From Isurus oxyrinchus (Eukaryota): DNA of 64,000 nucleotides. The translations under genes and the position numbers were made by a program. The notes under the pieces were generated by a model. That model did no database searches and was not told the DNA's origin. It was given only the letters and a program-made list of their open reading frames with translations. Of the stretch, positions 1 to 60,200 are shown piece after piece. The stretch is taken from NCBI GenBank assembly GCA_026770705.1, contig JANJGN010000036.1, positions 1,674,001-1,738,000 of the forward strand, read 5' to 3'. Position 1 is the first letter of the stretch. Each line of letters begins with the position of its first letter.

Positions 1-689
1 GTGTCTGTGAGCGCATGTTTGTGTCTGCATTTATGTTTGAAAGAGAGAGGGAGACTGATAAGTAATTCATGACTATACAGAACATTCAAGCCTGACATCG
101 GATTGGATGTCAAAAATCTCTCGTGAACACGATCAAGTTTGAAAAAAGTTAATGATTAATTGAAGAGTTCCAAACGATTCTTGTTTCTACATTTCTTCGG
201 CCCATATTTTCATTCATTTTCCTAAATTGGACCACTGGCTTAATATTTAGAGTAGTCCATTGGGTATAAATCGCTTTGGGGCGTTCTGAGGATGTTATAG
301 ATATCATGGAATCAGAGATTTCTAGAGCATAGAAAGAGGCCATTTGGTCCATCGACCTTACGTCGCTCTTTGAAATAGTTATCTAATTAGTCCCACTCCC
401 TAGCAAACTCCATAGCTCTGATATGGCGGCCACCCGCCACCCCGATCAAATATTTATCCATTTTCCCCTTTGAAAAATCCCATTGAACCCGCTTCCACGT
501 ATTCACCAACACGGGGGGTGGGGTGGGGGGGGGTGGGGGGAGTTCCAATCCAAATCAATCCAGTTCTCATTTCTGGATCTGAAGGGGCCTGATGCCATGT
601 TAAAATTTGTCCTCTGCTGAGGAATGAAATCGCCTCTAAATAAACACTAATGGAAAAAATGTGTTGGAAAGACAGATTGAGTCACTTAC

Positions 690-727
690 TCCCAATATTC
701 AGGGCCGGCGCAGCCTCCGACGGTCCA
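690..727 (-). pseudogene. Ig light-chain J segment relic (type I/sigma-cart-like)
   Basis: Minus strand reads TGG ACC GTC GGA GGC TGC GCC GGC C CTG AAT ATT GGG A|GTAAGT = WTVGGCAG/LNIG, a decayed WTFGxGTxLNLG with a 1-nt frameshift and a perfect splice donor; about 350 bp downstream of the V-RSS. Confidence 0.7.
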
Positions 728-766
728 CAAGGAGCGGTTTTGCAATGGGACTAGTCGCCTATAACC
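728..766 (-). other. Degenerate J-side RSS (23-bp spacer type)
   Basis: Nonamer-like GGTTATAGG (766-758), 23 nt, heptamer-like CTCCTTG (734-728) directly before J; alternatively CCTTGTG (732-726) with a 25-nt spacer. Confidence 0.45.
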
Positions 767-1055
767 CCAGCTGGGGGCAAAACAGAGATTGAAATGTTAA
801 TAATCTTCCCATGAATACATCCCATGTCGCATTTTGTCTTTCAAATGGACTGTAGCCAGAGAGGTACTTCCAAAATAGCACGAATCCCTGAGATTATTCA
901 CCTGGGTAATAGTGAGAATTAATACTCGCTAAATGCAAGGAAACAATTGGAAATTCAGTTACATTTCCAAGTAAATGACACAAGGATTATTTTTGAAGAT
1001 GATTGCACATTCCCAGTCCAGTGGCTGTTCTAATTCTGAGATATTTTCTACATAC

Positions 1056-1083
1056 AGTTTTTATACGGCCCTGTCTCACTGAT
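1056..1083 (-). other. V-side RSS with 12-bp spacer
   Basis: ATCAGTG (1083-1077) + AGACAGGGCCGT (12 nt) + ATAAAAACT (1064-1056); consensus CACAGTG-12-ACAAAAACC; the critical CAC is mutated. Confidence 0.8.
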
Positions 1084-1413
1084 TATCCCTGCTGAGCTCT
1101 GCCGGACCTGACAGCAAAGACGGCGGCGTCATCCGGATCCAGCTTAAGATGCCCAGAATGAAATTGTTACTGGGGGTATCTGTAGAAGATTGAAATCGGT
1201 TCCTGAAGCGGTACGTCAATTGGTGCCACCACGTGTACTGTGATATAGCAGCCGGACTGGATTGTAACCTGATCACTGACGGTAGCAGTTCACGCTGTAG
1301 CTGCCCACACAGCCGTCCTGAGTCCCATACTGTCCATGAGCGGTCTGACCAGCGGAGACTGGGTCAGAAATTGGGGACAGATTGTGAACAGAAAGAAAAA
1401 AATAATTATGAAC
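1084..1413 (-). pseudogene. Ig light-chain V segment pseudogene, shark type I (NS5/sigma-cart)
   Basis: Frame-stitched translation SPISDPVSAGQTAHGQYGTQDGCVGSYSVNCYRQ*SGYNPVRLLYHSTRGGTN*/FRNRFQSSTDTPSNNFILGI/LDPDDAAVF/CQVRQSSAG follows the type I L-chain V pattern (PISDPVSAG, VGSY, WYRQ, HSTSG, DTSSN.ILTI, DxAVYYC); stops and frameshifts; CAG acceptor at 1416-1414. Confidence 0.85.
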
Positions 1414-1485
1414 CTGGCCGTTAATGCATCAGTAAATATATGTGCAATACAATCCAGATCTCGGTATTTAACGGATTCCAAGTGA

Positions 1486-1537
1486 CCAAAAAAAGAAAGA
1501 GTCCACAAGAAATGCAGCACTGTACAAGGAGCAGCAT
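1486..1537 (-). pseudogene. Putative leader exon of the IgL V pseudogene
   Basis: ATG at 1537 gives MLLLVQCCISCGLFLFL followed by a GT, about 75 nt upstream of the V acceptor. Confidence 0.45.
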
Positions 1538-1622
1538 TTTCGACGGAGCAGCACCAACAGCAGCGGCCGACATTTCCCATTGCAAAGATCGCTATGAACT
1601 CCAAGAGCTGCTCTGGATAAAA

Positions 1623-2780
1623 CCATAAGACTATAAGACATAGGAGCAGAAATTAGGCCATTCGGCCAATCGAGTATTCTCTGCCATTCAATCAAGGCTG
1701 ATGAGGTTCTCAACCCCTTTCGCCCGCCTTCGCCCCGTAACCTTTGATCCCCTTACCAATCAAGAACCTCTCTATCTCCATCTTAAATACACTCAATGAC
1801 CAGGCCTCCACAGCCTTCTGTGGCAATAAATTCCGTTGATTCACCGCTCTCTTGCTGAAGAACTTTCTCCTCATCTCTGTTCTAAAAGGTCTTCCCTTTA
1901 CTCTGAGGCTGTGCCCTCGGGTCCTAGTCTCTCCTACTAATGGAAATATCTTCCCCATGGCCACTCTATCCAGGCATTTCAGTATTCTGTAAATTTCAAT
2001 CAAATCCCCCAACATCCTTCTAAACACCATCGAGTATAGACCCAGAGTCCTCAAGCGTCCTCATATGTTAAGCCTTTCATTCTTGCGATCATTCTTGTGA
2101 ACCTCCTGTGGACCCTCTCCACGGCCAGAACATCCTTCCTGAGGTTTGGGGCCCAAAATTGCTCAAAATATTCTAAATGTGGTCTGACCAGAGCATTTTA
2201 AAGCTTCAGCAGCACATCCCTGCTTTTAAATTCTAGTCCTCTCGAAATAAATGCCAACATTGCATTTGCCTTCCTAAATACCGACTCAACCTGCAAGTAA
2301 CCTTAAAAGAATCCTGGACTAGGAATGCCAAATCCCTTTGCACTCCAGATTTCTGAATTCTCTCCCCATTTAGAAAATAGTCTATGTCGCTATTCTTCCT
2401 ACCAAAGTGCATGACCTCACACTTCCCCACGTTGTATACCTTCTGCCACTTCTTTGCCGATTCTCCTAACCTGTCCAAATCCTTCTGCAGCTTCCCCGTC
2501 TCCAGAATACTACTTGGATCCGGTGACGGAAGGAGCAGATTCTCTGGCTCTATTTCTGAACAACAAATAAGGAACTGGAGTCGGCCTCTCGACCACAGCA
2601 ACCCAGCCTCTGCTGGTCGAGCTTGCGCCTCCATTCAATAAGATCAGGGATGACCGGATTTTAACAACAACCCCGCACTCCTGATAATCTTTTACCCCCT
2701 TGTTTACCAAAAATCTATCTAGCGCTGTCTTAAAAATACTCAAAAACCTCTCTTCCATCGCCGTTTGAGGCATGTAAATG
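1623..2780 (-). mobile_element. CR1-type LINE 3' fragments (two adjacent)
   Basis: LQKDLDRLGESAKKWQKVYNVGKCEVMHFG and GDLIEIYRILK...TRTRGHSLRV...RRKFFS are CR1 ORF2 C-terminal motifs; short tandem tail (ATAAGAC) at 1625-1640. Confidence 0.9.
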
Positions 2781-7369: not shown

Positions 7370-7640
7370 AAACACACACACAAGCTCAGTCACACACGAA
7401 CACATTCACGAAAGAAAACCGTACAAAGATGCAGTCTCTCTCTTTCACACACATACACACTCACAAATTCAAACACATACATACACGCACACACACAGAG
7501 TTAGTCACACACATCAACACACATTAGCAGGCACACACAGTTACACACACACACACACACACACACACATAAACACACAAACACTTACAGTCGCACACAT
7601 GAACAGACATACACTTAGTCACACACATACACACACACAT
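7370..7640. repeat. Imperfect (CA)n microsatellite
   Basis: Direct sequence; similar CA/TG tracts at 13130-13270, 27230-27470, 36980-37240, 47490-47560, 51410-51510, 63350-63424. Confidence 0.95.
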
Positions 7641-8623: not shown

Positions 8624-8782
8624 NNNNNNNNNNNNNNNNNNNNNNNNNNNNNNNNNNNNNNNNNNNNNNNNNNNNNNNNNNNNNNNNNNNNNNNNNNNNN
8701 NNNNNNNNNNNNNNNNNNNNNNNNNNNNNNNNNNNNNNNNNNNNNNNNNNNNNNNNNNNNNNNNNNNNNNNNNNNNNNNNNN
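8624..8782. other. Assembly gap (159 N)
   Basis: Run of N. Confidence 1.
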
Positions 8783-12015: not shown

Positions 12016-15000
12016 GTGAGTTAGAGGCGGGTGAGAATTTTAAATTGGAATCAGCCAGAATTAATATTTACTAAATTGAAATGTGACCCAGTGAACAGGT
12101 TCTGACCAGATCATGGTGTTTATTTTCTGGTTGCTACTGCAAATTAGAGAATAAATCTAACCTAGAATAATTAAAGACAACAATGTCGTTAAATGACAGA
12201 CGAAGTGTCTCAAAGCGACTGCTTCCAGTCTCTAAGTAACCAGTGGTAATGTAACAATAATCGATACAATTACAGAATGTGAGCCGAGTCTGCCTCAGAG
12301 CCCCGTCATAATGACAGCTGAAGTCGGAGAGACGGTGGAATTAGCCTGTCAGCACATTGACGAAGTGGAATTGGTGTCTAGCTATTTCTGGTACAAACAG
12401 CGTGTGGGTGAAGCTCCCAAATTAATCGATATCCAGCCCTGTCAGGGGGCCTATTGTAAGTTTATTTCTAAAAAAAGCGACAGCAAAAATGTGTTGATGT
12501 TGGAAATTCGCAATGTCCAGGAGAATGACTCGGGATCTTATTACTGTGCTGATAAGGTTGTCTATGCATCGCTGCAGAATGGACCCACGCTACTGACTGG
12601 AGGTAAGCGAACAAGTGAAATGAATTCAGATCATGCACAGCATTGTCATTTCGTGAAATTTAATCGTTTACTATGTCCCAATCTCTGTCCAGACATTTCC
12701 ACCGACAACACGGCTCTGCTGGTGTTTGTCCCGCCGGGTGAGCTGCATTTGAGTGAAACCGTCCCGTTAGTGTGTTTGGTCAGTGGAGTTTCTTCCAATC
12801 AGATAGCTATTTTCTGGAATATTTCCGGCCTGGTCAGTGAGGGACAGAGCGATCCCGGAACAAGAGAGGCGGACGGGACCTACAGCATCAGAAGTCACTT
12901 CATGGTGTCGAGGGCAACCTGGAAGAGCGGCGGTTTCTGTACTTGTGTTGTTCAACTGGGTTCTCCTGGTAAATATTGGATAAAGACCGTGTCCTTCTCC
13001 AAACCAGGGGCAGGTGAGTTGTTGATCTGTTCAATGGAGGCTTCACTTCAGATTTTGCGCAGTTCTCAAGATTCTAAGAAACTGCACTCTGTGTATTAAA
13101 CATCTCTACGTGATAAATAGATGAGTGTATAGGAGTGTGTTTCCGTGCGTGTGTTTGAGTGTGTGTGTGAGCGTGTGTGGGTGTCTGTCTGTCTGTAATA
13201 GATATGTATCTGCATTCGGTAAATATGTATAGATGTGTGCGCGTGCGTGTGTCTGTGCATGTGTCTATATATATGAAAACATGTATTATTTTTGTTGAAA
13301 TAAGTTTAAGTTAGCACATTATCTCAGCTTGCCTTATATTTAGTGCGAATTCTTAGAATCACAGATTGACACCGCATGGAATTGAGCCATTCGGCTATTC
13401 TTTTAGTCCCAACCTTTCCCAATAAACCTTTAACAATCTTCCTTCATAATCCCTTAATTATCCAATTTCCCTGTTGAAAGTTATTATCGAATCTCCTTCA
13501 CCCGTCCTTTCTGGCACTGGTTATTGGAATGGAATTGAGATTAGGACGACACAGAATGAGTTTGTGGGAAGAAAACAGTGATTAGGTGAGGTTCTTTGGA
13601 AAATGGATGTGTCCGCAGGGATGTGATTTTGGGTCAATTCCACCACCAACGCCCCCGTCAACCTGAGCGGCTCGTTCTCCATTTCTTGGGACCTCCCTTA
13701 TCAATCTCCAGTTGGTTGGTAAAATTCAGTTTATTTTAATTACACTTTCTAATATCAAAAGTCGGATTAACATTAACATCGGGTTATGAAACTTCATGAA
13801 GTTAAATTATTCGAAACTCTCATCAAGCAGGTAACGCATGAAGGAGGTAGGGCATGTTGAATTGACCACTAAACAACATATGGAAAACTTGGCTTCATTA
13901 ATAGAGGAATCATATGCTAGAAGATTTTATATTTTATTAATGCCTTGTCAGACCGCAGCTGTAGTATTGTGTCCAATTCTGGACACAGTACTATAGGAAG
14001 GCTATCAGGGCCTTGGAGAAGCTGGGGCTGAGATTTGCCAGGATGGGACCAGGGACCAGGAACTTCAGTTAATGTGGAGAGAATGGAGAATCTGGCATTG
14101 TTTCCCTTTCAGCACAGAAGGGTACATGAGGATTATCAACTGAAAGCCAATTGAGTGCAAAACATCAATAGCATGAATGGCTTGTAAAGAGGAATTAAGG
14201 AGGAATCTGTTTCCACTGGCAGGAAGCAAAGCTGGGGTGGTGGTGATTTTGTATTCCTTATACACAAAGAGCCGGCACACACACGAGCCGAACTGCCCCA
14301 GTGCTTGGGCCGCAGCTATTCAGAATCTTTGGATGTGGGGACGAATTGTAATATTTCCAAATTTGTTGAGGACACAACTCCAAGTGGGAATGTAATTTGT
14401 TAAGAGGATCCGACGAGGCTACAAAGGGGTTAAGGCACGCGAAGTGAAATCGCAAGGAAATAGCAGATGGTATATAATGTCAACAAGTGTGAAGTTATCC
14501 ATTGTGGGAGAAAAAAACAAAAAGGCAAGTATTTCTTAAATGGTGGGAAGTTTGGAAATATTCATAACAAAAGCCGCCAGAGTGTCCTTGTTCACGTGTC
14601 ACTGAAAGATACCAAGCAGCTTCAGCAAGCAGCAGTAAGCAACAAGGAAGGTAAGTAATATTTTGTTCTTCATCGCAAGTATATTTGAGTAGAAGAGTAA
14701 AGATGTCTTGGTGCAAATGCATAGAGCCTTGGTGAGATCGCACCTCGAGTATTTTGTACGGTTTTGATCTCCTTATCTAAGGAATCAGGCATTTACCATG
14801 AAGGGAGTGCAGCAGAGGCTCCCCAGGCTAATACCTGGGATGGCGGGATTGTCTGATGAGGGGAGATTGTGGAAACTGGGTCCGCCTTCTCCAGAGTTTG
14901 AAATATTGAGAGGTGATATAAATGAAAGTTGCAATTTGTTTACAGGGTGCAATAGGGACTCTGAAGATAGGATATGTTTTCTCTTGCCTGGTGAGTCTAG

Positions 15001-19217: not shown

Positions 19218-22200
19218 ATGGGCGTCTTCACTCTCTGCGTCCTGCTCCACCTTTTCCCAGGTTAGATTTCCTTAATCCTGATGCACGGAGTTATCCCAGG
19301 GCAAGCTCACTCAGGAAACTCAGGCAAGTGAGGAGGCGACGCTGCCGCTTTCTGGAACATTCCTCCTCTGTTGAGGAACTTAATGATCAAAAGGTCACAA
19401 TTTGAGACAAACCGAAATGTCCCACATCTGATAGCTGCAATTGTGAAGAGGACAGGACAGCCCTGACTGCGCCCCGGGCCGAGACGCATCTCTCCACCCA
19501 ACACACTGTCTGATTATTACTATTTGTGGGATCTTGCTGTGCGATAAATTTTGGCCGCATTTCTGGGAATGCAAGAGTGACTGCCCTTGAAAAAAATAAT
19601 TCATGTGAAGGGTTTTTCTCTCCTTTCTATGCCTTTCCTTCTTTTCTCTCTCTTTCTGTCTTCATTTCTTCTTTCCTTCCTCTCTTCCTCAAGATCAGAT
19701 CTCAAATTTAACCCTCAGCGCTTCATCCCGGCTACAGGTCAGGAACTGGCGATCCTTCCTGACAGAATGTCCCTGTCACTAGGTGACAGGCGGAATGTCT
19801 CTTAGGTATAAAACAGGTTTTATGTTTCCCTGACATAACAGGTTTTCTTGTGCTGTGTTCTGTTCCCTCAGTTACCGTCTCTCAGGCCGCGTTCCCGCAA
19901 ACTCCGGCCGCTCAGACCGTCTCGGTGGGCAGTAGCTTCAAGGTGAATTGCCACACAGGCTGGTTATCAAGTGAAGCTGTTTACTGGTATAAACAGCGGC
20001 ACCGGGAGCACCTGCAGTTCGTTCACAGGGTGAGAAAGCACATCCCTGCAGAGGGAAGGTTTTCAGGAGAAATCAACGACAAATCGACCATTTACACCCT
20101 GGTGATCGAGGAGGTCCAGAAAAATGACTCGGGTGTTTATTACTGCGCAGCCCGGAAACCCCATGGAATGTCCCTGGTCTTCGGGACCGGCTCCAAATTG
20201 TTCACCACAGGTAAAAACAAAAAGAGAACTGAGATTGTTTACTTGCTTTATCATTGTTTTTTCCTTCGCTCGCGGGATGTGGGTGTCTCTGGTTCGGCAA
20301 AGCATTTATTACCCATTCCTAATTACCCTTGTTTAGGGGGCATTTAAGACAAAGTGTGGATCTGGAATCAGATGTAGGGTCAGACCGGGTAAGAGCGGCA
20401 GATTTCCTTCTCCCAAGGGCATTAGTGAACCAGATGGGGGTTATTTTCTTGTTGATAACAATTGATTCCTGGTCATCATTAGACTTTCAATTTCAGATTT
20501 TTATTGAGTTCCAATTCTCCCTCTGCCGGAGGTGCGATTCGAAGCCGCATCCGCAGAGCATTACTTACTCTCTAGATTACCCCATACCAGTGACAATACC
20601 ATTCCGCACCATCTCCCCCAAACTATCAATAACCAGTAATTCACTGTGAATAATAATTACATCTTACTTCCCAAACTCGCCAGGTCCGCCGACAATATTC
20701 CTCTTAGCTCCGCCGGTAGATGAAGCTGTTGGAATGGAGACTGTCCCATTGATGTGTTCAGTGAACAACGCGGCCTCTGTTACCCTTCCCGTCCGCTGGA
20801 ATTTTTCCTCGTGGGAGACAGAGGGATGGACGGATTCTGGAACAATCGACTCTGATGGGGCTTACAATATAAGAAGCCTCATCAGGGTCCCGCCAGGGAC
20901 CTGCAGCGGGGGCGGGTTCTGCACTTGCTCTGTTCAAATCACCTCCACTCAAAGTCTCATCAGTGAAAGGTTCTCATATCAGAGAGGTAACTATTGACAA
21001 TGTCCCTTTACTGGTATATTTAATTGCTGATGTGAAACTGAATTGTTCGCAATACCGCATGTTTTATCCCAATAGTCGCTCCCTTTCCCTGTTTTTGGAC
21101 ACAGGCACAGATTCGTAGAAAGTTTACGGCATAGGAAGAAGCCATGGTGCCCGCCCCATAGAAAAAACGAGCCACACAGCCCAATCCTACTTTCTAGAAT
21201 TTGGTCCATATTCCTGCATCTTACAGCGCTACAGAAACACATCCAGTTGCCTTTTAAATGTGCTGAGGGTTTCTGCCTCTATTGCCCTTTCAGACAGTGA
21301 GTCTCGGACCCCTACAACCCTCTGGGTGAGTAAACTCTTCCCTCGTCTCCCCTCTAATCTTTCTACCAATCACTTTAAACCTGATCAGTGACCTCTCTGC
21401 TAAAGTAAATAGGCCTTTCCCATTTCCTCTATCCAGACTCCTCACAATTTTGCACACCTCAAACCAATATCCCCTCAGCCTCCTCTGCTCCAAGTTGAAC
21501 AGCCCCAGCCTCTCGAATCTTTCCTCACAGTTGCAATTTTCCAGTCTTGGCAACATCCTTGTGAATCTGTTCTGTATCCTCTGTAATGCAATCACGCCCT
21601 TTCTGTAATGAGGAGACCAGAAATGCACACAGCACTCATGCTGCAGCCTAACTCATATTTTATGCAGTTCCATCATAACCTCCCAGCGCTTGTATTCTAT
21701 ATCTCTGCAAATAATTGAAAGGACCTACGGCTAGTTACGTGGTCAATTAGCTATTCTGTATCCTTCAGTGTTTCAGTGTTTAGCACCCTAAAAGTTGAAG
21801 CCCATCTGTTCAACTATGCCAGAGTTACATGGTGGGAGGTGTGGAATCAGTCTGAAATTTTGCAGTTTAAAATTAGAAAATTGAAATTCAATTTCAAGTT
21901 TGAAACTTGAGCAGTATTTTGCTTCTATCCTCCCAAAAAAAAATTATTACAATCCCATCAGCATGTGCTCTAACCCTCTTTTCCCTTTCTCCACCGTGTG
22001 TACAAGGATTTTCTACACAATGACACTTTCCCTTGCCGCAATTTCCACATTCTAACAAAAAAAACAAAATAACGTGGATACACGAAAGCTGAAGCAAAAA
22101 CAGGAAAAGAAACGGCCTGGAGAAGGGTCACACAGACCCGTTTCTCTCTCCACAGATGCTGTCAGGCCCGCTGAGTTTCTCCAGTATTTTATATTTTTGT

Positions 22201-32689: not shown

Positions 32690-33420
32690 ATCGGACAGAG
32701 GTGCAGAGAGAAATGGGTTACAGACACACAAACACTTGGCATTAGAGACAGAGGTTAATAAGGCCACAAAAAGCAAACCACCCAGCACTGGGAGAAATGC
32801 CTAAAGAAATAGAATTGAAAAATAGAAAAGGCTTTGCTGAAGTTATCATTAGCTTATATGTAGAACACTTGTAGTCCTGTGAACAACATTCATCTCCAGA
32901 TTATAAAAAGGATATAAAGGATTGGAAAGGTGGAGACAAAGAACCGTCACCCGGGTGACATTCGCACTGAGAGTTTATAATTATCAGAAAGCTTGAACAG
33001 GCTGGGGTTGTTTTTTTTTCTTGAAAAGAGAAGACTGAAGGGTGACGTGATGGAGAACTTTTGGCTTTTCAAGTGATTTGTGAGCGTAGAAGAAACATTT
33101 TTTTGACATGTGTAGGGTTCATACACGGTCTCCGGGCCATCAATATATGACAGTGCCTAATATCTCATATCTGGAATTCAGGAGAAATTTATAAACCCAC
33201 AGAATAGGGAGAATAGGGAACTCGTTACCGCAGTAGTGGTTAATGTGAATAGCTGAGATGCATTCAGGACAAAACTGGAAAAATACATGAGTGTGGAAGG
33301 AATAGAAGGATATGTTGAATGTGTGATTTGAAGTGGAAATGGAGAGGGCTTGTGCGGAACATAAATAGCAGCACGGAGCAGAGGAGCCGAATGGCCTGTC
33401 GCTCTCCTGGAAAATCTGTT
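32690..33420 (+). mobile_element. Decayed CR1 3' fragment in a B2 intron
   Basis: TTGAACAGGCTGGGGTTG..AGAAGACTGAAGGGTGAC..GAATTCAGGAGAAA..GAATGGCCTGT. Confidence 0.75.
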
Positions 33421-37043: not shown

Positions 37044-39909
37044 CAAACACACACACAAGCACAAACACCCCAAACAGACACACCAAACACACACACACAG
37101 CCCAAACACAAACACACACATCAAACAAACACGAACACAACACACACATGCACACACCAAACACGCACACACACAAAACACACACACACACACTGACAGC
37201 AAAATAGAAAGTGAGACACATTAACTATATACACACATAGTCACGCGCAGCATGGGGTACCTCACTCACCTCTACAGCTCCAGTATCCTCTATGTGCCAG
37301 TTGTTAACTCTTACAGTAACACAAGATACAGTGATCTTCGCGATATCTTTCAACTTGTTGCACAAAAATGAACATTTACACAGTGACACAGAGCTAGCTC
37401 TGAAGGGACATGAATGAAATAAATCATTCGGTGTAATATTCGTTTGCGGTCCGGTATAAAATGGTTAAATTACAGCATTTCTGTTTTGGAATGAAAGCCC
37501 TCCTGTTGCACTTATCGATGGGGCAATGGCGGCTTCTGTTCCAATAATACCCAGCGGCTGAGAAAGGCCTCAATCAGTGAAACAGGCCGCACTGCACACT
37601 GGGTCAACCTGCTGCGTATGCTCAGGTCAAACTCCTCCAGAGCAGCCATTTTTATTTTCTTTATGCGCCAATTTCAGAGCAGAATTTTTGATCCCTCTCG
37701 CGTCTAACGTGTCTCTTCTTCGTTTGACGACTTTATGTGACGTCACGTTCAGATGGCGACCATTTTCCCCGCACGGGGGCTGTGGCCCACGAATGACAAA
37801 GTGCAAGGGCTGGAATCGGGGAATGCGGCAAGAGATGACTCCTGGATGATCAGATAGCAGAGGAGGGCGAGAAGAGTGTTACACAGGGCCCGTGCGGACA
37901 GGAGGGGAAATTGCAGCAGCCACACTGTGAGATCATTCCTCCTGAACAATTTCAAACACCCATGGAACTATTGCTCCCGTATGGAAATAAAATCCGTCTT
38001 ATTTGAGCCCTGGTAACATTTGCACAGTGCTTCCGAGGTAGGCATATTTCATCTTCCTTTCTAACTTGTTTTGCTCCTTATCTGGACACACATGATTGTG
38101 CTTTATACAGATTGCAACCTATCCCTTTCTCCATAACATCCATCACTGGGACATAAGTTTACATATTTCACGGAGATTAAAGTGAGTTTGCTGATTGGTG
38201 CCGTTATTTCACATGGGCACTTTTGGTTGATAAAGAAAAACAAACATGTATCTCGACAGCGCTTTCAATGAGCTCAGGGCATCCAAAGTTTTTTCCAGTC
38301 AGATGAAGAATTTCTGACGTGTCGTCCTAGTTGTTGTGTAGGAAATGCAGCAGCCAATCAGCGCACAGCAAGCTCCCACAAACATAAGTGTGATAATGAG
38401 CAGATGTTGGTTGCGAGTTACATATTGGTCCCAGGGCCGGTGAGGGGTGAGTTGAAGAAGTGGGGAACTGCATCCATCCCCTCCCCCCTCATTCGTGCTC
38501 CTGTTCTTCTTCCAATATTGCCTGTGGAATACTTTGGCATAGTTTACATCTGCCTGAGATTTTTGGCAGGGCCTCAATTTATCATATCATCCAAAACACA
38601 GCTTCTCTTCAACTGCTGCACTCCGTCATTACTGAATCCTGAGGCATCAATCTGGCTCAAGTCCCTGGAGCAGGACATTAATCAACAACGTGCTGATTCA
38701 GAAGGGAGGAAGGTACGTATTGAGCAGTAAATTACATCCTGTCAGGAATCCGTGTGTCTGGACTCATCAGTTGAAATGTTTGATTGCCCTTAATGTTTTG
38801 ATGCTCTTAAGAAAAAGAGGTGATGATGTGTTTGAATGGCAGATAAGTCTTCGTCATAACTGACGAGTTTGCTGCTCGATATTGAAGGCAAGAGACGAGA
38901 AAAAATGGAAGGGTCTCTAAAAGCAGGCCACGCTATTTGTGCCACGTCACAGGCGGGCCAATAGCACCGTTGATCTGGGTATCAGGAGCTAAGATAAGGC
39001 TTTCAAAACACCACCCAGGGCGCCTGCCTGCAGATGACGAGGGGCTTAGCTACTTTCAGTGCCGTTCTCAGATACAGACCGGGACCTGGCTGTTGGACAA
39101 TGGGTATCAACGTTGTCGTGGATTAAACTGGACTGATAAATGTTTGCTGGCTTGCAGCAGCTTTTAATTCAACGGACCTTATTGTGCATCTCACGCCCCA
39201 TGCCTCCACCCCCCGCCTCTTCCACACCTCCCACCCATCCCCCCCCCCCCCCACAACCCAACACCCCCACCCCCATCCCCCAGATCTTCATAGAAAGGAA
39301 CATAAGGATCAGAAGCCTGAATTGCCCTTCACGCCTGCTCCACAAATGAATAATGGCTGACCTTCTCCATCAACCCCACTTTCACTTTATTCATTCGTTC
39401 CAAAACTCTACTGATCGCTGCGTTGAACACACTCAGAGAATGTGCATCCACAGCTCTCTGGGTGGAGAATTCCAAAGATTCACAAACCTCTTGGTGAATC
39501 AATTTCTACTCAACTCAGTCCTGAATAGGTAACAACTTATCCTGAGATTTGTTACTGATTACTGGACGCTCCAAGCATGGCGGGGGCGGGGGGGGGGGGG
39601 GGGGGGGTGGGGGGGGTCTAGAGTTAGGAATCCCACTCAGCATTAACTCTGTCAAGCCCTTGCAGAATTTTACATGTTTCAATGAGATCACCTCTTATTC
39701 TTCTAAACTCCAAAATCTATGGACCGATCCCACTCAATCTCTCATCATTGCACTGCTGCCCCCTTGTCCTGGCCTCCCTGCCTCACTAGAGGAAATCATT
39801 CCTCTCTATCGATTCTACTGAATCAACTAATCAGATTAAACTCCTCAATCAGGTCACAGTTTAACTTCCCAAATTCGAGGAAATGCAAGCCTAGCCCGTG
39901 TAACCCGTC

Positions 39910-42250
39910 CTCATAATTATAACCTTATAGTACTTCAATCGCCCTGTTGAACTTAGATCTGGTTTATATAACCCCACAGCACAATCTTAATTCACATTCA
40001 CGAGAATGCTACTCTAAACGCTTACTTGTTTCCCGCAAGGATTTATTGGATAATTTCTGAGGGATGGGTCTTGAATGAGTCTTAAAAGGGAGCTCTTTGT
40101 TATTCTGGAACCTGATCTGTTTGTATCTACTGATTCTGGAGTAACTAGAATCGGAAAATCTAGACTGATGTGACTTTGATCGGTAATGCAATGAAGCAGG
40201 TCTGGTGTTCTCCTTCCTCCTTCTCTCTCTCTCTCTCTTTCTCTCGCTCTTTCTCTCTCTCCCTAATTGAATATCGTGCTGCCAATGTTTGCAAACCTAG
40301 GATCAGGAAAACAGTAATATCTAGACTGAAAAATAAGAAATTGCATCTAGATTGCATTCTATCATGCTGGCCGTTACATTATACAATGATAATTGGGTTT
40401 CCATGGCTATTCAATTCTATCAATTTGCCGACAATATCCTAGACGTGGGAAGTGAATCATCCAGTGGTGGGGATTTCTGGGAACCATTGCTCCTCGGTCA
40501 CCTGTTTTTTTTTTTTTTTCCAAAACAAACTCTGCTCACTGTAACGTTCTGAATTGTAGGTTTAAACTTAAACACAAACCAAAACAGACTGTGCAAAAGT
40601 AAAATTGAACCCTCGTAAGCTGGCTGCATCACCTTCCTGTAACTCTCCTGTTGTATTATAATCCTGTAAATCATTAACACAGCTCTTCTCAGACACACAA
40701 ACCCAAAAATACCAGCATCTCAACACAGGACTGATATTGCCACCTTAAAACAGATTGCAGTTTCACCCAGGTGACATAAGCTAAATATTGATCAAAAGAA
40801 ACCTCTACTCTGTCAATAAAATCGATGAATAATTTATTTTATTTACATACAGGCATTTGCAAGGAAATAATAATCCTGCCAGTAACTGGAGTTACAGAGT
40901 TCGCATAAAGGATTGAGAAAAAACTCAATGAAGTTCCGAATCTTTGCTCATTGTTACGTTCACGCTTGAATTACACTAGTACAGTGGAATATCATTCGCA
41001 ATATTTAAGGCAACCTATTTCATATTTTTTAATAATGATCCAGTCTTTGTAAGCCCTGACGGTTGCACAGAGAAGGCTGTCCCCTTAATTTAAACCTTAT
41101 AGCTCCTATATCGTTCTGTTGAGCTTAGATCTGATTTTTATAACCCCACAGCATAATCTAAACTAACTTACAAAAGAAGGATACTGTGAAGAGATCATTT
41201 TTAACCGCAAGAGATTTATTGGACATTTTCTGGGATATGGATCTTGAAAGAGTTTTAACAGGCAGTTCTTTGTTACGCCGGAATCTCACCCGTTTCCATT
41301 CTCTGATCCTGAAGTAATATGAATCCGAATATGCAGACTGATGTGAATTTGATAGGTATTGCAGTGTAACCCCCAGGTGTGGTGTCCTCCTCCCCCTTCT
41401 CTCCCTCTGTCTCCCTCTGTCTCTCTCTCTCTCTAACTGAATATCTTGTTGCTAATGTTTGCAAACCTAGGATCAGGAAAACAATAATATCTAAACTGAA
41501 AGATAAGAAATTCCATAAATATTGCCTTCTATCATGCTGGCAGTTACATTTTACAATGATAATTGGGTTTCACTGGCGATACATTTCTATCAGCTTGCCC
41601 ACAATATCCCAGACATGAGAATAGAATCCTTCAGTGGTGGGGATTTTTGGGAACCATTACTCCTCGGTCACCTGCTTTTTCTCCAAAACAAACTGTACTC
41701 ACTCCATGTCTGTAACTTGAAGGCTTAAACTTAAACACAAACATAAAGAAACTGTATAAAAGTAAAATTGAACCTTCATATGTTTCCTGCATCTGTTTCC
41801 TGTTCCTTTACTGTTGTGTTCCAATCCTGTAAATCATTAACACAACACCTCTCAGACAGAGAAACCGACAACTACCGCCATCTCAACCAAGGACTGATAT
41901 TGCCATCTCAAAATAAATTGCAGTTTCATCCATTTGGCATTGAATTATATGCTAAATATTGATCAACACAAACTTCTCTTGTGTCATTAAAATCCAAGAA
42001 TAATTTATTTTATTTACATACAGAAATTTGCAGGGATATAATAATCCTGTCAGAAACTGGAGTTACAGGGTCAGCAGAAATGTTTAAGCGAAACACAAGG
42101 AAGTCCCTAATTTTTGCTCAATGTTACTTTCACGCTTGAATTACACTAACACAGTATAATATCCTTCGCAATATTCAAGGCAACTTATTTCATCTTTTTT
42201 CAAAAATGAACCAGTCTTTGCTAGCCCTGACGATTGCACCGGGAAAGCTT
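39910..42250. repeat. Tandem duplication, unit about 1.17 kb (39910-41078 / 41079-42250)
   Basis: Matched anchors CTTAGATCTG..TAACCCCACAGCA, AATGTTTGCAAACCTAGGATCAGGAAAACA, CAGTCTTTG..AGCCCTGACG.TTGCAC. Confidence 0.9.
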
Positions 42251-54724: not shown

Positions 54725-55939
54725 CTTGATGCGGTGAGTTCTCCCTGTTTTCGCTCTCACCAGTTTGTTACTGCAGGTCGAGTGGCCGCAGACTGACCTG
54801 AGCTCAGTCCCAGTGAGTTGCTCCCCTTTCAAATGCGGCGGAAACTATGACGAGCTATGCTATTGGACAGATGACACTTTTTAGGTACGGGTCCTGGTGA
54901 GTGCCACACCTTAACACACTAAGGTCACCGTCTGTGCGTCACAGCTGTCAAGTCGCCGAATGTTTAAAAAGAACTTTACTGGGCTGTCGTTCACGGGGGC
55001 AGCGGTGGGGGTAACAGAATACTAATTGTATGGTGGATCTTCAAAGTTGAAGATAAAATTTGATTCATTCCCGGCATGTAAGCCTCACTGGCAAAGCAAG
55101 CATGTATTAACCATCTCTAATTGCTTCTTGAGAAGATGATGGTCAGCCGCCTTCTTGAGCTGCTGCGTGCCACGTGGAGTAGGTACACCCACAGTGCAGT
55201 TAGGAAGAGAGTTCCAGTATATTGACCCAGTGACAGTGAAGGACCTGCAGTCCTTTCCAAGTCAGGGTGTCACGTGGCTTAGAGAGTACTTGCAGGTGGT
55301 GGTGATCCCATGCAACTGCTGCCCTGGTACTTCAAGGTTGTAGAGGTCGCAGGTTTGGAAGGTGAATGCCTGGTATTCAGAAAGGAGTATCATTATACCG
55401 CATATAATTTATTCTTTGAAGAGGTTGTACAAGATTCTTGATAAACTCTGGTTAACCCCGAGTTTGGGAAACATGGAATGAAATAGGCATGGTTTGATTT
55501 GTATGTGAATTACTAGCATCTTATTCTCCATAACACAAGTTACACAGAGACCTAGAGTGGAATTCTAATGGGACAAACACGTTCATTCACGACACATATA
55601 GAGAATCTCAGTGAACGAAACTCTTTCGAATTCAGTTCTACTCCTTAAAAGTTCCGTGCATTGCCCTCCTTTTGTTTAAGTCTCATTAACCAGGTTTTCA
55701 ACTGTCTTAATCTGTGATACAAAACACCAGTGGGGATTTACCTGAATCCAGTGTTCTGAGTTCGTGGTAGAATTTTATTTGCCAACGACCTGATTGATCC
55801 CTTGAAGGGAATTTCAAACAATAATACATTTTTCGCTTTATGTTTTAGGCTAAGTGCGTTCACAGCAGTTCAATGGAAAATTCAGTGTGCAGTTATGACG
55901 TGCAACAAGCTGTCAAGCATCATTGATGTTACAGTTTAT

Positions 55940-57207: not shown

Positions 57208-60200
57208 ATGAGCTTCCTCGCTGTGTGTGCATTATGCCATCTCTCCCAGGGTGAGATATCTTAGCATGTTCAGATAGAGTTGAGGAGGGAGTGGATACAG
57301 TAAATAAGGAGCAACTGGCGGGAAGGACTAAAATCAGAGGGACACAGTTTGAATAGAATCGGCCAGAAAATCAGAGGAGGAGATGAGAATATTTTTCTTT
57401 AACTAAGCGAGTTGTAGTGATCTGGAAGACTCTGCTTGAAAAGGCGGTGGCAGTAGATTTAGTAGGAACGTTCACATGGAGATTTGAACAAATACTTGAA
57501 AAGGAAACATTTGCAGGAATATGGGGGAAGGAGCGGGCGGGTAAGTGGGGCCTAAGTGGATCGATCTCTCAAAGTGCCAATGGCATCCACCAGCATTGTG
57601 CGGTTCAAGAAGTTGAAATTCAGTTATCAAGTTCTACGTACAAATAGAAAGAATATCGTCAACAACGTGGAATTTGTGCATCCGTCAGGATCAATGGATG
57701 GTATTAATTCGAAATGTAACCACTCCTGGGATAAAAGGTGTGAGTTGGCTCCATTGACATTATTAGCGATTGAGCAGAGACCAGAGTTTCAAGTACATTG
57801 TTAGAGTGAGTTATAATCTCTTGAACAAAATAAAGCGCCCAAAACAGGCGGGGATAAACGGGAAACGAAGGGTGCTTGAGAAATATTAAAAGTTGGAAAA
57901 TTCAGAGTTGAAGCACCTCTTTTAATGTATTAACTTCACACCGTTCCCAAGTGTGGACCCCAGTGATTAAACCAGATTTCCTGCCGAATGAACTTCTGCT
58001 GGGCCCTTGGAAAGACAGGGATAAAAATGCGCAAAGAATCCATAGCATGCGATTTTTCGATATGGGCTATTATTAAAAATTCTTTGTGCCTCCTCTCTTT
58101 CGAGGTGTATTCGCCGGAGGCCGGTCTCAGTAGAGAGGATGTGCGGGTGCGGGGTGATGGGCTGCACCATAACCTGAGGTAACTCTTGTTTATTTCTCTC
58201 TCGCTCAATTATTGTGTCTCAGCCTGCTTTGCCCAGTCTCCGCCGGTTCAAACATTCCCTGCGGGGAGTCGCGATAAACTGAGCTGCCACACGGAGAAAC
58301 CAGGAGTTGGCTACGTCTTCTGGCACAGACAGTCGGATCGAAACGACATGAAGTTGGTTTATAAAGCGCACAAGCACCTTCCAGCTGTGGGGAGTGTTTC
58401 CAGCGAGATTTCTGATAAAGAGAGTTATTATTCACTGCTCGTTGAGGATACCCGGAGAAATGATTCTGGAATGTTTTACTGTGCCATCCGCAATTACACA
58501 AACATGGCTCTAACTTTCGCAAATGGCTCCCAGTTAGTGACAAAAGGTAAATTTAATCATTGTTCCATTGAATTGGGCACTTCTACGGCAAAGTCTCAAG
58601 TTTCAGCTGTTAATGGGGTTTCTGTTCCAAATCCCAACTTTAGAGGGCTCGCCCGCCATATTCCTCCTCACCGCGCTGGAGCATGTGATCCATTCGATGA
58701 AAAGGGTCCCGCTGTTGTGTTTGATGAGAGGCTCGTCCCCCGATTCCTTTCCCATCCGCTGGAATGTTTCCGGGAGGGTTACCGAGGGACAGACCGATTC
58801 CGGGACAATTGAGATGGACGGGACAAACACCATGAGGAGTTACCCCAGCCTCTCGGAAAAAACTTGGAGCAGCGGCCCTCTCTGTACTTGCGCCGTTCAA
58901 ATCAACTCCAGTGAAAATCTTCTCAGTGCACGTGTCTTATCTCACACAGGTATCTATTAACAGTGACCGTTTAACTATCTATTTAATGCTGATGGCAGGC
59001 TTTGCAATTTTGAAAATTAGAATTGTCTTCCTTTTCGTCTGTGTCCATGTATCATCATTCTATCCTTGAACTATCACAGGTCTCTCAATCTTTCAGACTT
59101 TAGCTTTCTGAAATTTTAACTCCATCTGTTCTCTCTACCCCAGAGAGTTATGGATGTTCAGTCACTAAGATAGATTTTTGTACACTAAGGAAACAAGTGT
59201 TGCAGATAGCGCGGGAACGTCAAGTTGTTGTGCAAGATTAGCCATAGCCTTATTGAGTGGAGCATCAGCTTTGAGGGACCGAATGGTCTTCTGTTCCGAT
59301 TTCTTGTGTTGTTTCTGTCTAGGCGTATTGACCTGGTTGCCTGCTGCTTGATGATTTATCAATGTGTAAAATTGAAAGGTGCGATTACATTCCCAGTGTA
59401 CCATTTTGTCTCACCATGCTGTGTACAGTTATCCATTCATCTCTCTATCTACTGAATATTCACAATATTTCAGTCTGTTTCAGTTAAAAAGTGAGGTATA
59501 AGACATTTTCTGTATCTGTCTGTTTATCTGTTCATCCTTCTATCTATTTCTCTCTCTCTCTCTCTCTTTCTCTCAATCAATCATTCTATTTCTGTGCTAG
59601 TGCAGTAAAATATATCTGGCCCCTCTGCCTGTCTGTTTGTCTGTCTGACTCTGTCTTCCCCCCTCTCTCTACTGACCTCCTCTCGCTCTCCAACTGCATC
59701 TCTCTGTCTCAATCTTTCCTCGTCGTTCACCCTGTTTGTGTGCCGTTTTCTGTCTGTCTCGTTCTGTGCCCTAATAATTTATGTATTGTGTCCTCTATTT
59801 ACCTATCTTACTCCCCCTCTGAATACCTCGAATAACTCTACCGCACTGAAATGATGCGGCAACAGGAATCAATGTCCATTTATCTCTCTATTTATATCAC
59901 TCACGCTCTCTCCACACCTCTCTTCCATTATTTCTCTCTGCTTCTTCTTGCCGCTATCTCTTGCCTCATCTCTGCCTGTCTCTAATTCTCTTGCTCTATT
60001 TCTATCCTTTTCAATAAACAGTTCTGTTTACGCTGTCAGTTCTATCTATCTATCTATCAATCAATCTATCTATCTATCCATCTATCAACCTATCCATTTA
60101 TCCATCTATCTCTCTGTCTCTCTGTCTGTCTATTTTTCTATCTTCAACTGTCTGTACTCCAACTCCCTCTATTTCTCCGATTTGTACGGTGTTCCATAAG

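What the first reader, a model, noticed from the sequence alone, without database searches (positions are those of the whole stretch)
690..1537. RSS-bearing Ig light-chain (type I/sigma-cart) V-J relic about 10 kb from the non-rearranging receptor cluster
Seen: leader, V, 12-spacer RSS, about 290 nt, degenerate 23-type RSS, and J with a GTAAGT donor, all on the minus strand and not recoverable as one ORF because of frameshifts. Known: shark L chains occur as V-J-C miniclusters. Inference: physical linkage of a RAG-dependent L-chain unit to germline-joined VJ-C1 genes is the synteny expected if both descend from one ancestral antigen-receptor region.
Basis: partly seen in the sequence, partly recalled or inferred. 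Interest (0 to 1): 0.78.

Follow-up and report, generated by a model that had tools for sequence, protein, structure and literature searches.

The report
Dead shark antibody light-chain gene relic
This is the long-dead remnant of an unrearranged shark antibody light-chain gene segment lying next to a cluster of hard-wired antibody-like receptor genes; such dead copies are ordinary in sharks, and this one alone cannot show that the two gene kinds share an origin.

Summary
No piece is recognised by Pfam, PDB or the big protein searches, and a V profile built from the neighbouring receptors scores it only weakly. Laid reads make the case. A roughly 5-copy DNA contig and an abundant probable-RNA contig of the same animal match the 5' half of the V exon at about 83% identity. 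Both carry a Cys codon where the relic has Tyr. Other multi-copy contigs share the signal and its flank. A related species has the relic at 94% identity with no indels, and the same animal has a second copy at 85%. The J-side signal is no better than chance, and the J is only plausible. The V-12 spacing points to a kappa/sigma-type light chain. I could fetch no shark IgL reference, so "sigma-cart" is untested. The relic is not a decayed copy of the neighbouring VJ-C1 family. Linkage across the gap at 8624-8782 and the ancestral-synteny inference remain untested. The same stretch was noted before from the neighbouring window (s1-871805, s1-871707).

The parts
1487..1537 (-). Leader-like first exon: ATG at 1537, 17 mostly hydrophobic codons, GT at 1486-1485
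   Evidence: Read. Plausible only: the donor is weak (GTCACT), and the 19-letter loose end of the RNA-like contig has no significant match upstream.
1384..1486 (-). Leader intron, 103 nt. It ends in AC where an acceptor AG is expected.
   Evidence: The RNA-like contig X21 record 17 stops matching at 1384 and runs on unlike (tables 7 and 8), as expected at a splice junction or at a diverged intron.
1084..1383 (-). V-like exon relic, 300 nt. FR1-end motif GQTA; Tyr codon (1329-1327) at the Cys23 place; 13-codon CDR1; CYRQ in place of WYRQ (Cys codon 1287-1285); 15-codon FR2 ending LLY; GTDF; DPDDAAVF in the +1 frame (1139-1116); two Cys codons (1116-1111); two TGA stops (1275-1273, 1218-1216)
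   Evidence: contigs X1 record 4 (depth 64.7 against 11-14 for single copy) and X21 record 17 (depth 38.1) match 1276-1370/1384 with 17-18 other letters, and read TGC (Cys) at 1329-1327.
1056..1083 (-). Degenerate 12-spacer recombination signal: heptamer ATCAGTG (1083-1077), 12-nt spacer, nonamer ATAAAAACT (1064-1056)
   Evidence: 2+2 mismatches; 37 such sites in the window; 3 of 3 multi-copy contigs that cover it (X1 rec 3, X5 rec 26, X10 rec 10) match 1017/1024-1081 at 86-88% and all stop at 1081, just inside the two deviant heptamer bases.
1017..1055 (-). About 40 nt behind the nonamer, shared with the other genomic copies
   Evidence: table 8 (records 3, 10, 26) and raised depth in the bins 1004-1077.
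733..1016 (-). V-J spacer, single copy apart from the relic's own paralogue and orthologue
   Evidence: table 2 (flat depth) and table 8.
726..765 (-). Claimed J-side 23-type signal (GTTATAGGC, 24 nt, CCTTGTG). Not distinguishable from chance.
   Evidence: 7 of 16 mismatches. The best placements in the region have 6-7 mismatches.
690..725 (-). J-like stretch, T V G G C A G P E Y W, where a light-chain J reads T F G x G T x L x V x. Plausible relic.
   Evidence: The FGxG motif is broken at two places. The orthologue and the paralogue differ at 710 and 723 without restoring it (table 3).
684..689 (-). GTAAGT splice-donor-like hexamer directly after the J-like stretch
1617..2640 (.). Highly repeated element starting about 80 nt upstream of the leader ATG; it takes the place where a promoter would lie. 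The right end was not mapped.
   Evidence: summed depth rises from about 14 to 1.7e5-9.8e5 at 1596-1660, and many contigs begin to match at 1617-1625 (table 7). ORFs 1713-2060 and 2236-2634 have no Pfam family.

Best explanation
This is the V-J part of an old, dead, never-rearranged shark immunoglobulin light-chain minicluster of the kappa/sigma kind (V with a 12-spacer signal).

Its living relatives in the same genome number about five copies, and at least one appears to be abundantly transcribed. In those relatives RAG would cut at the V and J signals and join the segments, and the J donor would splice to a C exon. For this relic that exon would lie left of the window.

The relic can do none of this:
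- The Cys23 and Trp41 codons are changed.
- There are two stops and at least one frame change.
- The acceptor AG and the first two heptamer bases are lost.
- The J-side signal is gone.
- A repeat sits about 80 nt upstream of the ATG.

It died before the split from a related species and before a duplication that left an 85%-identical second copy.

Shown: the sequence features, the relatives, the orthologue and the paralogue. Inferred: V identity, light-chain class, J identity, loss of function, and that the RNA-like run is RNA.
For: - Ordered V hallmarks in a 300-nt exon behind a split leader.
- Relatives: X1 record 4 (125 nt, depth 64.7 against 11-14 single copy) and X21 record 17 (375 nt, depth 38.1 in a run of only 116 million letters, too deep to be plain genomic coverage) match 1276-1370/1384 with 17-18 other letters. 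They read Cys (TGC) where the relic has Tyr (rows 1327, 1328).
- X1 record 3 (depth 75.5) matches an FR3 piece from 1154 onward and the signal plus flank (1024-1081) in the same order as in the relic.
- RSS-12-like site directly at the V end: about 0.006 by chance.
- The signal is shared at 86-88% with 3 of 3 multi-copy contigs.
- Orthologue in organism B: X5 record 25, 578-1377, 49 other letters, 0 gaps. B also has TAT at 1329-1327.
- Paralogue in organism A: X1 record 2, 662-1306, 98 other letters, 0 gaps.
- No likeness to the neighbouring VJ-C1 V domains: 12 tblastn queries, smallest E 0.054 and on the wrong strand.
- V and J about 330 nt apart fits the shark one-V, one-J, one-C cluster (PMC5192425 and PMC12227049, passages read).
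- Pseudogene sigma-2 loci are already known in nurse shark (PMC5192425).
Against: - Sequence statistics alone do not prove a V domain.
- Of 8 pieces, 0 hit any Pfam family at E up to 10.
- Of 3 pieces, 0 hit any PDB chain.
- The 36-residue piece found only three T/G/S-rich repeat proteins among 1.84 billion representatives.
- The Atlas gave nothing, and no protein shared three words with the 51-residue piece.
- A profile of 14 VJ-C1 V domains gives the read-through only 0.2-1.1 bits, matched or beaten by 3-6% of 3000 null windows.
- FR1 looks about 3-7 residues short.
- The J lacks FGxG and a signal.
- The heptamer lacks CAC.
- Only 10 of the 18 differences of the RNA-like contig were listed, so its own reading frame is seen only in part.
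- X21 is labelled RNA only as a guess.
- No C exon is in view.
Confidence: 0.72

Rival explanations
1. It is a decayed V exon of the neighbouring non-rearranging VJ-C1 (PRARP-like) family, not a rearranging gene segment.
For: It lies inside or beside that cluster. V-set/C1-set exons are at 12236-13096 and at 19787-20344 with 20650-20994, and a V-set exon lies at 58183-58809. Dead copies are common there according to earlier notes.
Against: 12 queries of that family give no match on the relic's strand (smallest E 0.054, wrong strand). The family profile scores 0.2-1.1 bits. V and J are separate, about 330 nt apart, with a 12-type signal at the V end. Its multi-copy relatives carry the same signal region.
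Confidence: 0.03
2. It is a dead RSS-bearing V of another antigen-receptor locus (TCR or IgH), with a chance J-like stretch behind it.
For: WYRQ-type FR2 is common in TCR V (recalled). The J and its signal are weak. No isotype test was possible.
Against: TCR and IgH V segments carry 23-spacer signals (established knowledge). Here the 12-spacer placement has 4 mismatches, and the 23-spacer nonamer placement matches only 3 of 9 by my reading. A GTAAGT follows the J-like stretch at cluster-type distance. About five relatives and an abundant RNA-like contig suit a small light-chain family.
Confidence: 0.08
3. It is not a V gene at all: a low-copy repeated, transcribed sequence that happens to show V-like motifs.
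For: All piecewise protein searches were blank. The profile test was weak.
Against: Hallmarks lie in the right order and spacing, together with a split leader, a 300-nt exon and a signal at its end. The relatives have Cys exactly at the Cys23 place. The DDAAVF-type motif sits a few codons before Cys codons.
Confidence: 0.1
4. On the evolutionary reading: the relic reached this place secondarily, by dispersal or duplication of light-chain miniclusters, so its neighbourhood says nothing about a common ancestral region.
For: Shark miniclusters are many, and their distribution is 'not well known' (PMC12227049, introduction passage). Some IgL loci lie with IgH/TCR alpha-delta, and lambda lies in another paralogous region (PMC12227049, sections 6 and 15). 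The relic has a paralogue elsewhere. It is flanked by repeats.
Against: Unchecked notes list further light-chain clusters on this same piece, amid VJ-C1 genes spanning more than 3 Mb. That looks like more than one stray copy.
Confidence: 0.55

Closest known systems
Shark Ig light-chain V-J-C miniclusters, including known pseudogene loci (nurse shark sigma-2/NS5: three expressed loci and one pseudogene; PMC5192425, passage read)
   Same: One V and one J a few hundred bases apart, a split leader, a signal at the V end, a donor after J, and decay of a single cluster.
   Different: No C exon is in view. The J-side signal is not recognisable. The isotype is not established. The relic sits beside non-rearranging VJ-C1 genes.
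Kappa-type (12/23) recombination-signal arrangement (PMC5985310, table 1 and text passages)
   Same: Heptamer, 12-nt spacer and nonamer directly after the V.
   Different: The heptamer lacks its first two canonical bases and the nonamer has two mismatches. The partner 23-type signal is not detectable.
[quoted passage not shown]
   Same: A rearranging-type segment and germline-joined VJ-C1 genes on one stretch of DNA, the kind of linkage used to argue for a proto antigen-receptor region.
   Different: The neighbours here are two-domain membrane receptors, not UrIg2. The rearranging unit is dead. Linkage rests on a scaffold with a gap. No cross-species test was possible.

Membership tests
Shark Ig light-chain minicluster (V-J-C) | V exon that encodes a V-set domain | tested here: inconclusive
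   Of 8 pieces, 0 hit Pfam. The profile of neighbouring V domains scores 0.2-1.1 bits, null fraction 3-6%. Hallmarks and relatives with Cys23 support it.
Shark Ig light-chain minicluster (V-J-C) | Split leader with a short intron before the V exon | tested here: inconclusive
   ATG 1537, GT 1486-1485, 103 nt, but AC instead of AG at 1385-1384. The RNA-like contig stops matching at 1384.
Shark Ig light-chain minicluster (V-J-C) | Recombination signal directly after V | tested here: met
   1056-1083, 12-nt spacer, 4 of 16 mismatches, about 0.006 by chance at this place. Shared with 3 of 3 multi-copy contigs. Degenerate: CAC is lost.
Shark Ig light-chain minicluster (V-J-C) | J segment with partner signal, FGxG motif and splice donor a few hundred bases downstream | tested here: inconclusive
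   GTAAGT is present (684-689). FGxG is broken (V G G C). The partner signal is no better than chance.
Shark Ig light-chain minicluster (V-J-C) | C1-set constant exon downstream of J | not testable with these tools
   It would lie left of base 1. Nothing C-like was seen in 1-680. The neighbouring-window note s1-871805 was seen by title only.
Sigma-2 (type I / NS5 / sigma-cart) isotype | V (and C) closest to sigma-2 sequences in a tree or by BLAST | not testable with these tools
Sigma-2 (type I / NS5 / sigma-cart) isotype | Small gene family, split V and J in sharks | tested here: inconclusive
   About 5-6 relatives by contig depth (64.7-75.5 against 11-14). This is compatible with the few sigma-2 loci in nurse shark against about 60 kappa genes (PMC5192425), but depth of contigs is a rough measure.
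Non-rearranging VJ-C1 (PRARP-like) receptors of this cluster | V and J in one exon, and sequence likeness to the family | tested here: not met
   V and J are apart, with a signal between them. No tblastn or profile match.

The most novel reading that the evidence does not exclude
Light-chain miniclusters of one kappa/sigma-type isotype are natively interleaved with a multi-megabase cluster of germline-joined VJ-C1 receptor genes in this shark. This relic, its orthologue in a related species and the intact clusters noted about 153 kb and 1.83 Mb away would be what remains of the region where a VJ exon was first split by the RAG transposon.
Probability: 0.12. Interest if true: 0.75.

Novelty: new member of a known kind. 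Interest (0 to 1): 0.36.

Why it matters
A dead light-chain cluster is ordinary in itself. Its place is what matters. Current work on antigen-receptor origins rests on finding rearranging loci linked to non-rearranging VJ-C1 genes (PMC12227049, PMC10751288). That work says the genomic distribution of shark miniclusters is not well known.

If this light-chain isotype is regularly interleaved with the VJ-C1 receptor cluster in several chondrichthyans, that would add a second such linkage group and make the question testable by synteny and trees. This relic adds one old data point: it was already dead and in place before two species split. It does not settle the question.

My searches of the held library found no paper describing such a linkage. 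Table S1 of PMC12227049 could bear on it, but supplements were closed.

Tried and rejected
Searches of the stop-free pieces, all blank or uninformative:
- Pfam on 8 pieces.
- PDB on 3 pieces.
- Representative library on the 36-residue piece. The three hits are T/G/S-rich repeat proteins.
- ESM Atlas.
- Word-indexed search on the 51-residue piece.

Attempts to fetch a true shark light chain as a reference:
- A search with the intact neighbouring V gave only 10 VJ-C1 proteins.
- A profile of that V plus seven relic pieces as separate rows was badly aligned by MAFFT. It again gave only 6 VJ-C1 proteins out of 165 candidates.
- I rejected a metagenome scan for a conserved word of the V exon as having almost no chance of holding shark DNA.

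Other checks:
- Relic as a decayed VJ-C1 V: rejected.
- A paralogue inside the window: none.
- The 19-letter loose end of the RNA-like contig as leader sequence: no match with up to 3 mismatches, and a local alignment no better than shuffles.
- LTQSP in the +1 frame at 1372-1358 first looked like a kappa FR1 motif. I dropped it because the related contigs keep the other frame (Cys codon).
- Pfam on ten flanking ORFs: nothing.
- The findings look-up by sequence was blank, which means nothing.

Not done:
- I did not examine, fill or look up the N run at 8624-8782, so the scaffold join is untested.
- I did not test linkage in other species.

Full report
WHAT IS THERE

I read 400-1900 on the minus strand and translated it in three frames.

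- An ATG at 1537 opens 17 mostly hydrophobic codons, up to a GT at 1486-1485.
- An exon-like stretch begins 103 nt later, at about 1383, and runs exactly 300 nt to 1084.
- Directly behind it lie ATCAGTG (1083-1077), 12 nt, and ATAAAAACT (1064-1056).
- A J-like stretch follows (about 725-690), then GTAAGT (689-684).
- The window has a single N run, at 8624-8782.

THE V-LIKE EXON

In one frame the exon reads, in order:
- a GQTA motif;
- four codons later a Tyr codon at the place of the first canonical Cys;
- 13 codons, then CYRQ where V domains have WYRQ;
- a 15-codon FR2-like stretch ending in LLY;
- later, GTDF.

The FR3-type motif DPDDAAVF is in the next frame (1139-1116). Two Cys codons (1116-1111) are back in the first frame, nine to ten codons before the heptamer.

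The first frame has TGA stops at 1275-1273 and 1218-1216. It has two more stops in the stretch where the other frame carries the FR3 motif. The exon length is a multiple of three, which allows two compensating shifts.

TESTS ON SEQUENCE ALONE ARE WEAK

The tools do not read through stops, so I searched the stop-free pieces apart.
- Pfam: 0 of 8 pieces matched at E up to 10.
- PDB: 0 of 3 pieces matched.
- Representative library: the 36-residue piece covering FR1 to FR2 found three proteins among 1.84 billion. All three are long T/G/S-rich repeat proteins.
- The Atlas gave no usable hit.
- No protein shared three words with the 51-residue piece.

In a script I built a profile from 14 V domains of the neighbouring receptor family and scored read-throughs with X at each break. 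They scored 0.2 and 1.1 bits. Of 3000 null windows from the same DNA, 6.2% and 3.1% scored as high or higher. This is only a hint.

WHAT THE LAID READS ADD

Runs found were laid on 560-1660 at 80% likeness.

Same animal (organism A, run X1):
- One contig is identical to the window (record 1).
- A second covers 662-1306 with 98 other letters and no gap, about 85% identity (record 2). This is an older paralogue of the J, spacer and V 3' part.
- A 125-nt contig at depth 64.7 covers 1276-1370 with 17 other letters (record 4). Single-copy depth is 11-14.
- A 765-nt contig at depth 75.5 matches 1024-1081 and, across a 72-nt skip, from 1154 onward (record 3, table 5).

Run X21 of the same species label:
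- It holds only 116 million letters and is labelled RNA as a guess.
- A 375-nt contig at depth 38.1 covers 1276-1384 with 18 other letters (record 17). It shows the same listed differences as record 4.
- That depth cannot come from plain genomic coverage of a shark genome, so I take it as a transcript or an enriched product. This is an inference.

At rows 1327 and 1328 both contigs differ from the window, so the codon on the minus strand is TGC. The relatives have Cys where the relic has Tyr. This fixes the reading frame. It also shows that the +1-frame LTQSP at 1372-1358, which I first took for a kappa motif, is a coincidence.

Related species (organism B, runs X5 and X10):
- The relic is present. 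X5 record 25 covers 578-1377 with 49 other letters and no gap, about 94% identity.
- B has the same letters as the window at 1327 and 1328.
- The relic was therefore already without its Cys, and in the same frames, before the two species split.
- The 23 listed positions (710-1270) where the paralogue differs from the window all show the same letter in organism B. This fits a paralogue older than the split.
- 137 rows of table 3 were not shown. I cannot say whether the stop codons are shared.

THE SIGNALS

I scanned the whole window for sites with at most 4 mismatches to the canonical heptamer and nonamer, with spacers of 11-13. There were 37 on both strands, against a mean of 24.7 (sd 4.0) in 20 Markov simulations. 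The relic's site is one of them. The chance of one falling within 10 nt of the V end on the right strand is about 0.006.

All 3 multi-copy contigs that cover the site (X1 record 3, X5 record 26, X10 record 10) match from 1017 or 1024 up to 1081 at 86-88%, and all stop there. The two heptamer bases beyond, where the relic departs from CAC, are not matched. This is what one expects if the relatives keep a proper heptamer (inference).

On the J side, the best nonamer-spacer-heptamer placements in 860-716 have 6-7 of 16 mismatches. The placement next to the J-like stretch has 7. That is chance level.

The J-like stretch reads T V G G C A G P E Y W. Several codons are one base away from a light-chain J, but the FGxG motif is broken. 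The orthologue and paralogue differ at 710 and 723 without restoring it. I rate the J as plausible, not shown.

WHAT KIND OF V

By the established 12/23 assignments, a V followed by a 12-spacer signal belongs to kappa-type light chains. Lambda, IgH and TCR V segments carry 23-spacer signals. PMC5985310 (passages) kappa-type and 23/12 lambda-type.

Shark lambda genes are germline-joined in all species studied (PMC5192425 and PMC12227049, passages). That leaves kappa, sigma or sigma-2.

About five to six relatives by contig depth would suit a small family such as sigma-2 better than kappa. In nurse shark, sigma-2 has three expressed loci and one pseudogene locus, and kappa has about 60 genes (PMC5192425). 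This is a rough indication.

I could not test 'type I/sigma-cart' directly:
- All three word-indexed searches returned only VJ-C1 proteins or nothing.
- No tool here searches shark genomes.

SURROUNDINGS

A highly repeated element begins at about 1617-1625, some 80 nt upstream of the ATG. Summed depth jumps from about 14 to 1.7e5-9.8e5 there. No contig bridges this boundary by 31 letters on both sides in organism B, so its age is not shown.

The nearest receptor exon is at 12236-13096 (V-set and C1-set). The next are at 19787-20344 (V-set, with an FGTGSKL J motif in the same exon) and 20650-20994 (C1-set). More lie at 33.7, 53.5-54.4 and 58.2-58.9 kb.

The closest database protein to the second gene is from basking shark, at 93% identity, and is named a kappa light chain-like protein by its source. 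The relic shows no likeness to this family: 12 tblastn queries gave a smallest E of 0.054, on the wrong strand.

The relic and these genes are separated by the N run, which I did not touch. Earlier notes of this scan, seen by title only and unchecked, place:
- a dead VJ-C1 pair 19 kb before the window;
- light-chain miniclusters noted as complete and apparently functional about 153 kb and 1.83 Mb beyond it;
- a rearranging IgL cluster noted about 919 kb beyond;
- VJ-C1 genes over more than 3 Mb of this piece.

The same relic was also noted from the neighbouring window (s1-871805, s1-871707).

COMPARISON AND VERDICT

The relic works like nothing now. It is what is left of a standard shark V-J(-C) minicluster, and pseudogene clusters of this kind are in print (PMC5192425).

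The evolutionary inference needs cross-species synteny and trees, and I could run neither.

- PMC12227049 (abstract, sections 6 and 15, other passages) links IgH, TCR alpha-delta, UrIg2 and some IgL. It places a lambda cluster in another paralogous region, and it says the distribution of miniclusters is not well known.
- PMC10751288 (passages) names PRARP only as a VJ gene in the MHC.
- PMC11599192 (one passage) lists PRARP among joined-VJ genes.
- Five searches of the held library found no paper on light-chain clusters interleaved with such receptors.

The finding is real but ordinary as an object. Its context is a lead worth following through the intact clusters rather than through this relic.

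Noticed in passing
window 1017-1055 (minus strand, behind the nonamer): About 40 nt behind the recombination signal are kept at 86-88% in the other genomic copies in both species. The block ends in a weak CTCF-like run (GCCACTGGACTGGG, about 9 of 14 to the consensus as I recall it).
   Followed up: no
elsewhere in organism A (not in the window); matches window 662-1306: A second copy of the J, spacer and V 3' part at about 85% identity with no indel over 645 nt (record 2). No such copy lies in the window. It may be the dead V-J cassette of note s1-868971, which is said to have a near-perfect V signal.
   Followed up: partly
window 1596-2640: A very high-copy repeat (summed contig depth 1e5-1e6) abuts the relic about 80 nt upstream of its ATG. 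Its ORFs have no Pfam family.
   Followed up: partly
window 12236-13096 (+): A single stop-free stretch of 287 codons holds both a V-set and a C1-set match. The V-C intron of this receptor gene is therefore open in frame or absent.
   Followed up: no
window 7536-7575, 32747-32774, 37921-37960, 55543-55581 (+); 12932-12960, 40504-40543 (-): Other sites with only 3 mismatches to a 12- or 23-spacer recombination signal. One lies inside a receptor exon. They are probably chance, and were not checked for V or J segments beside them.
   Followed up: no
window 1580-1587 (minus strand): CTTTGCAA, 6 of 8 to the Ig octamer ATTTGCAT (recalled), about 45 nt upstream of the leader ATG. Too weak to count.
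   Followed up: no
window 510-550 (minus strand): C-rich low-complexity run (CCCCACCCC repeats) in the J-C intron region.
   Followed up: no
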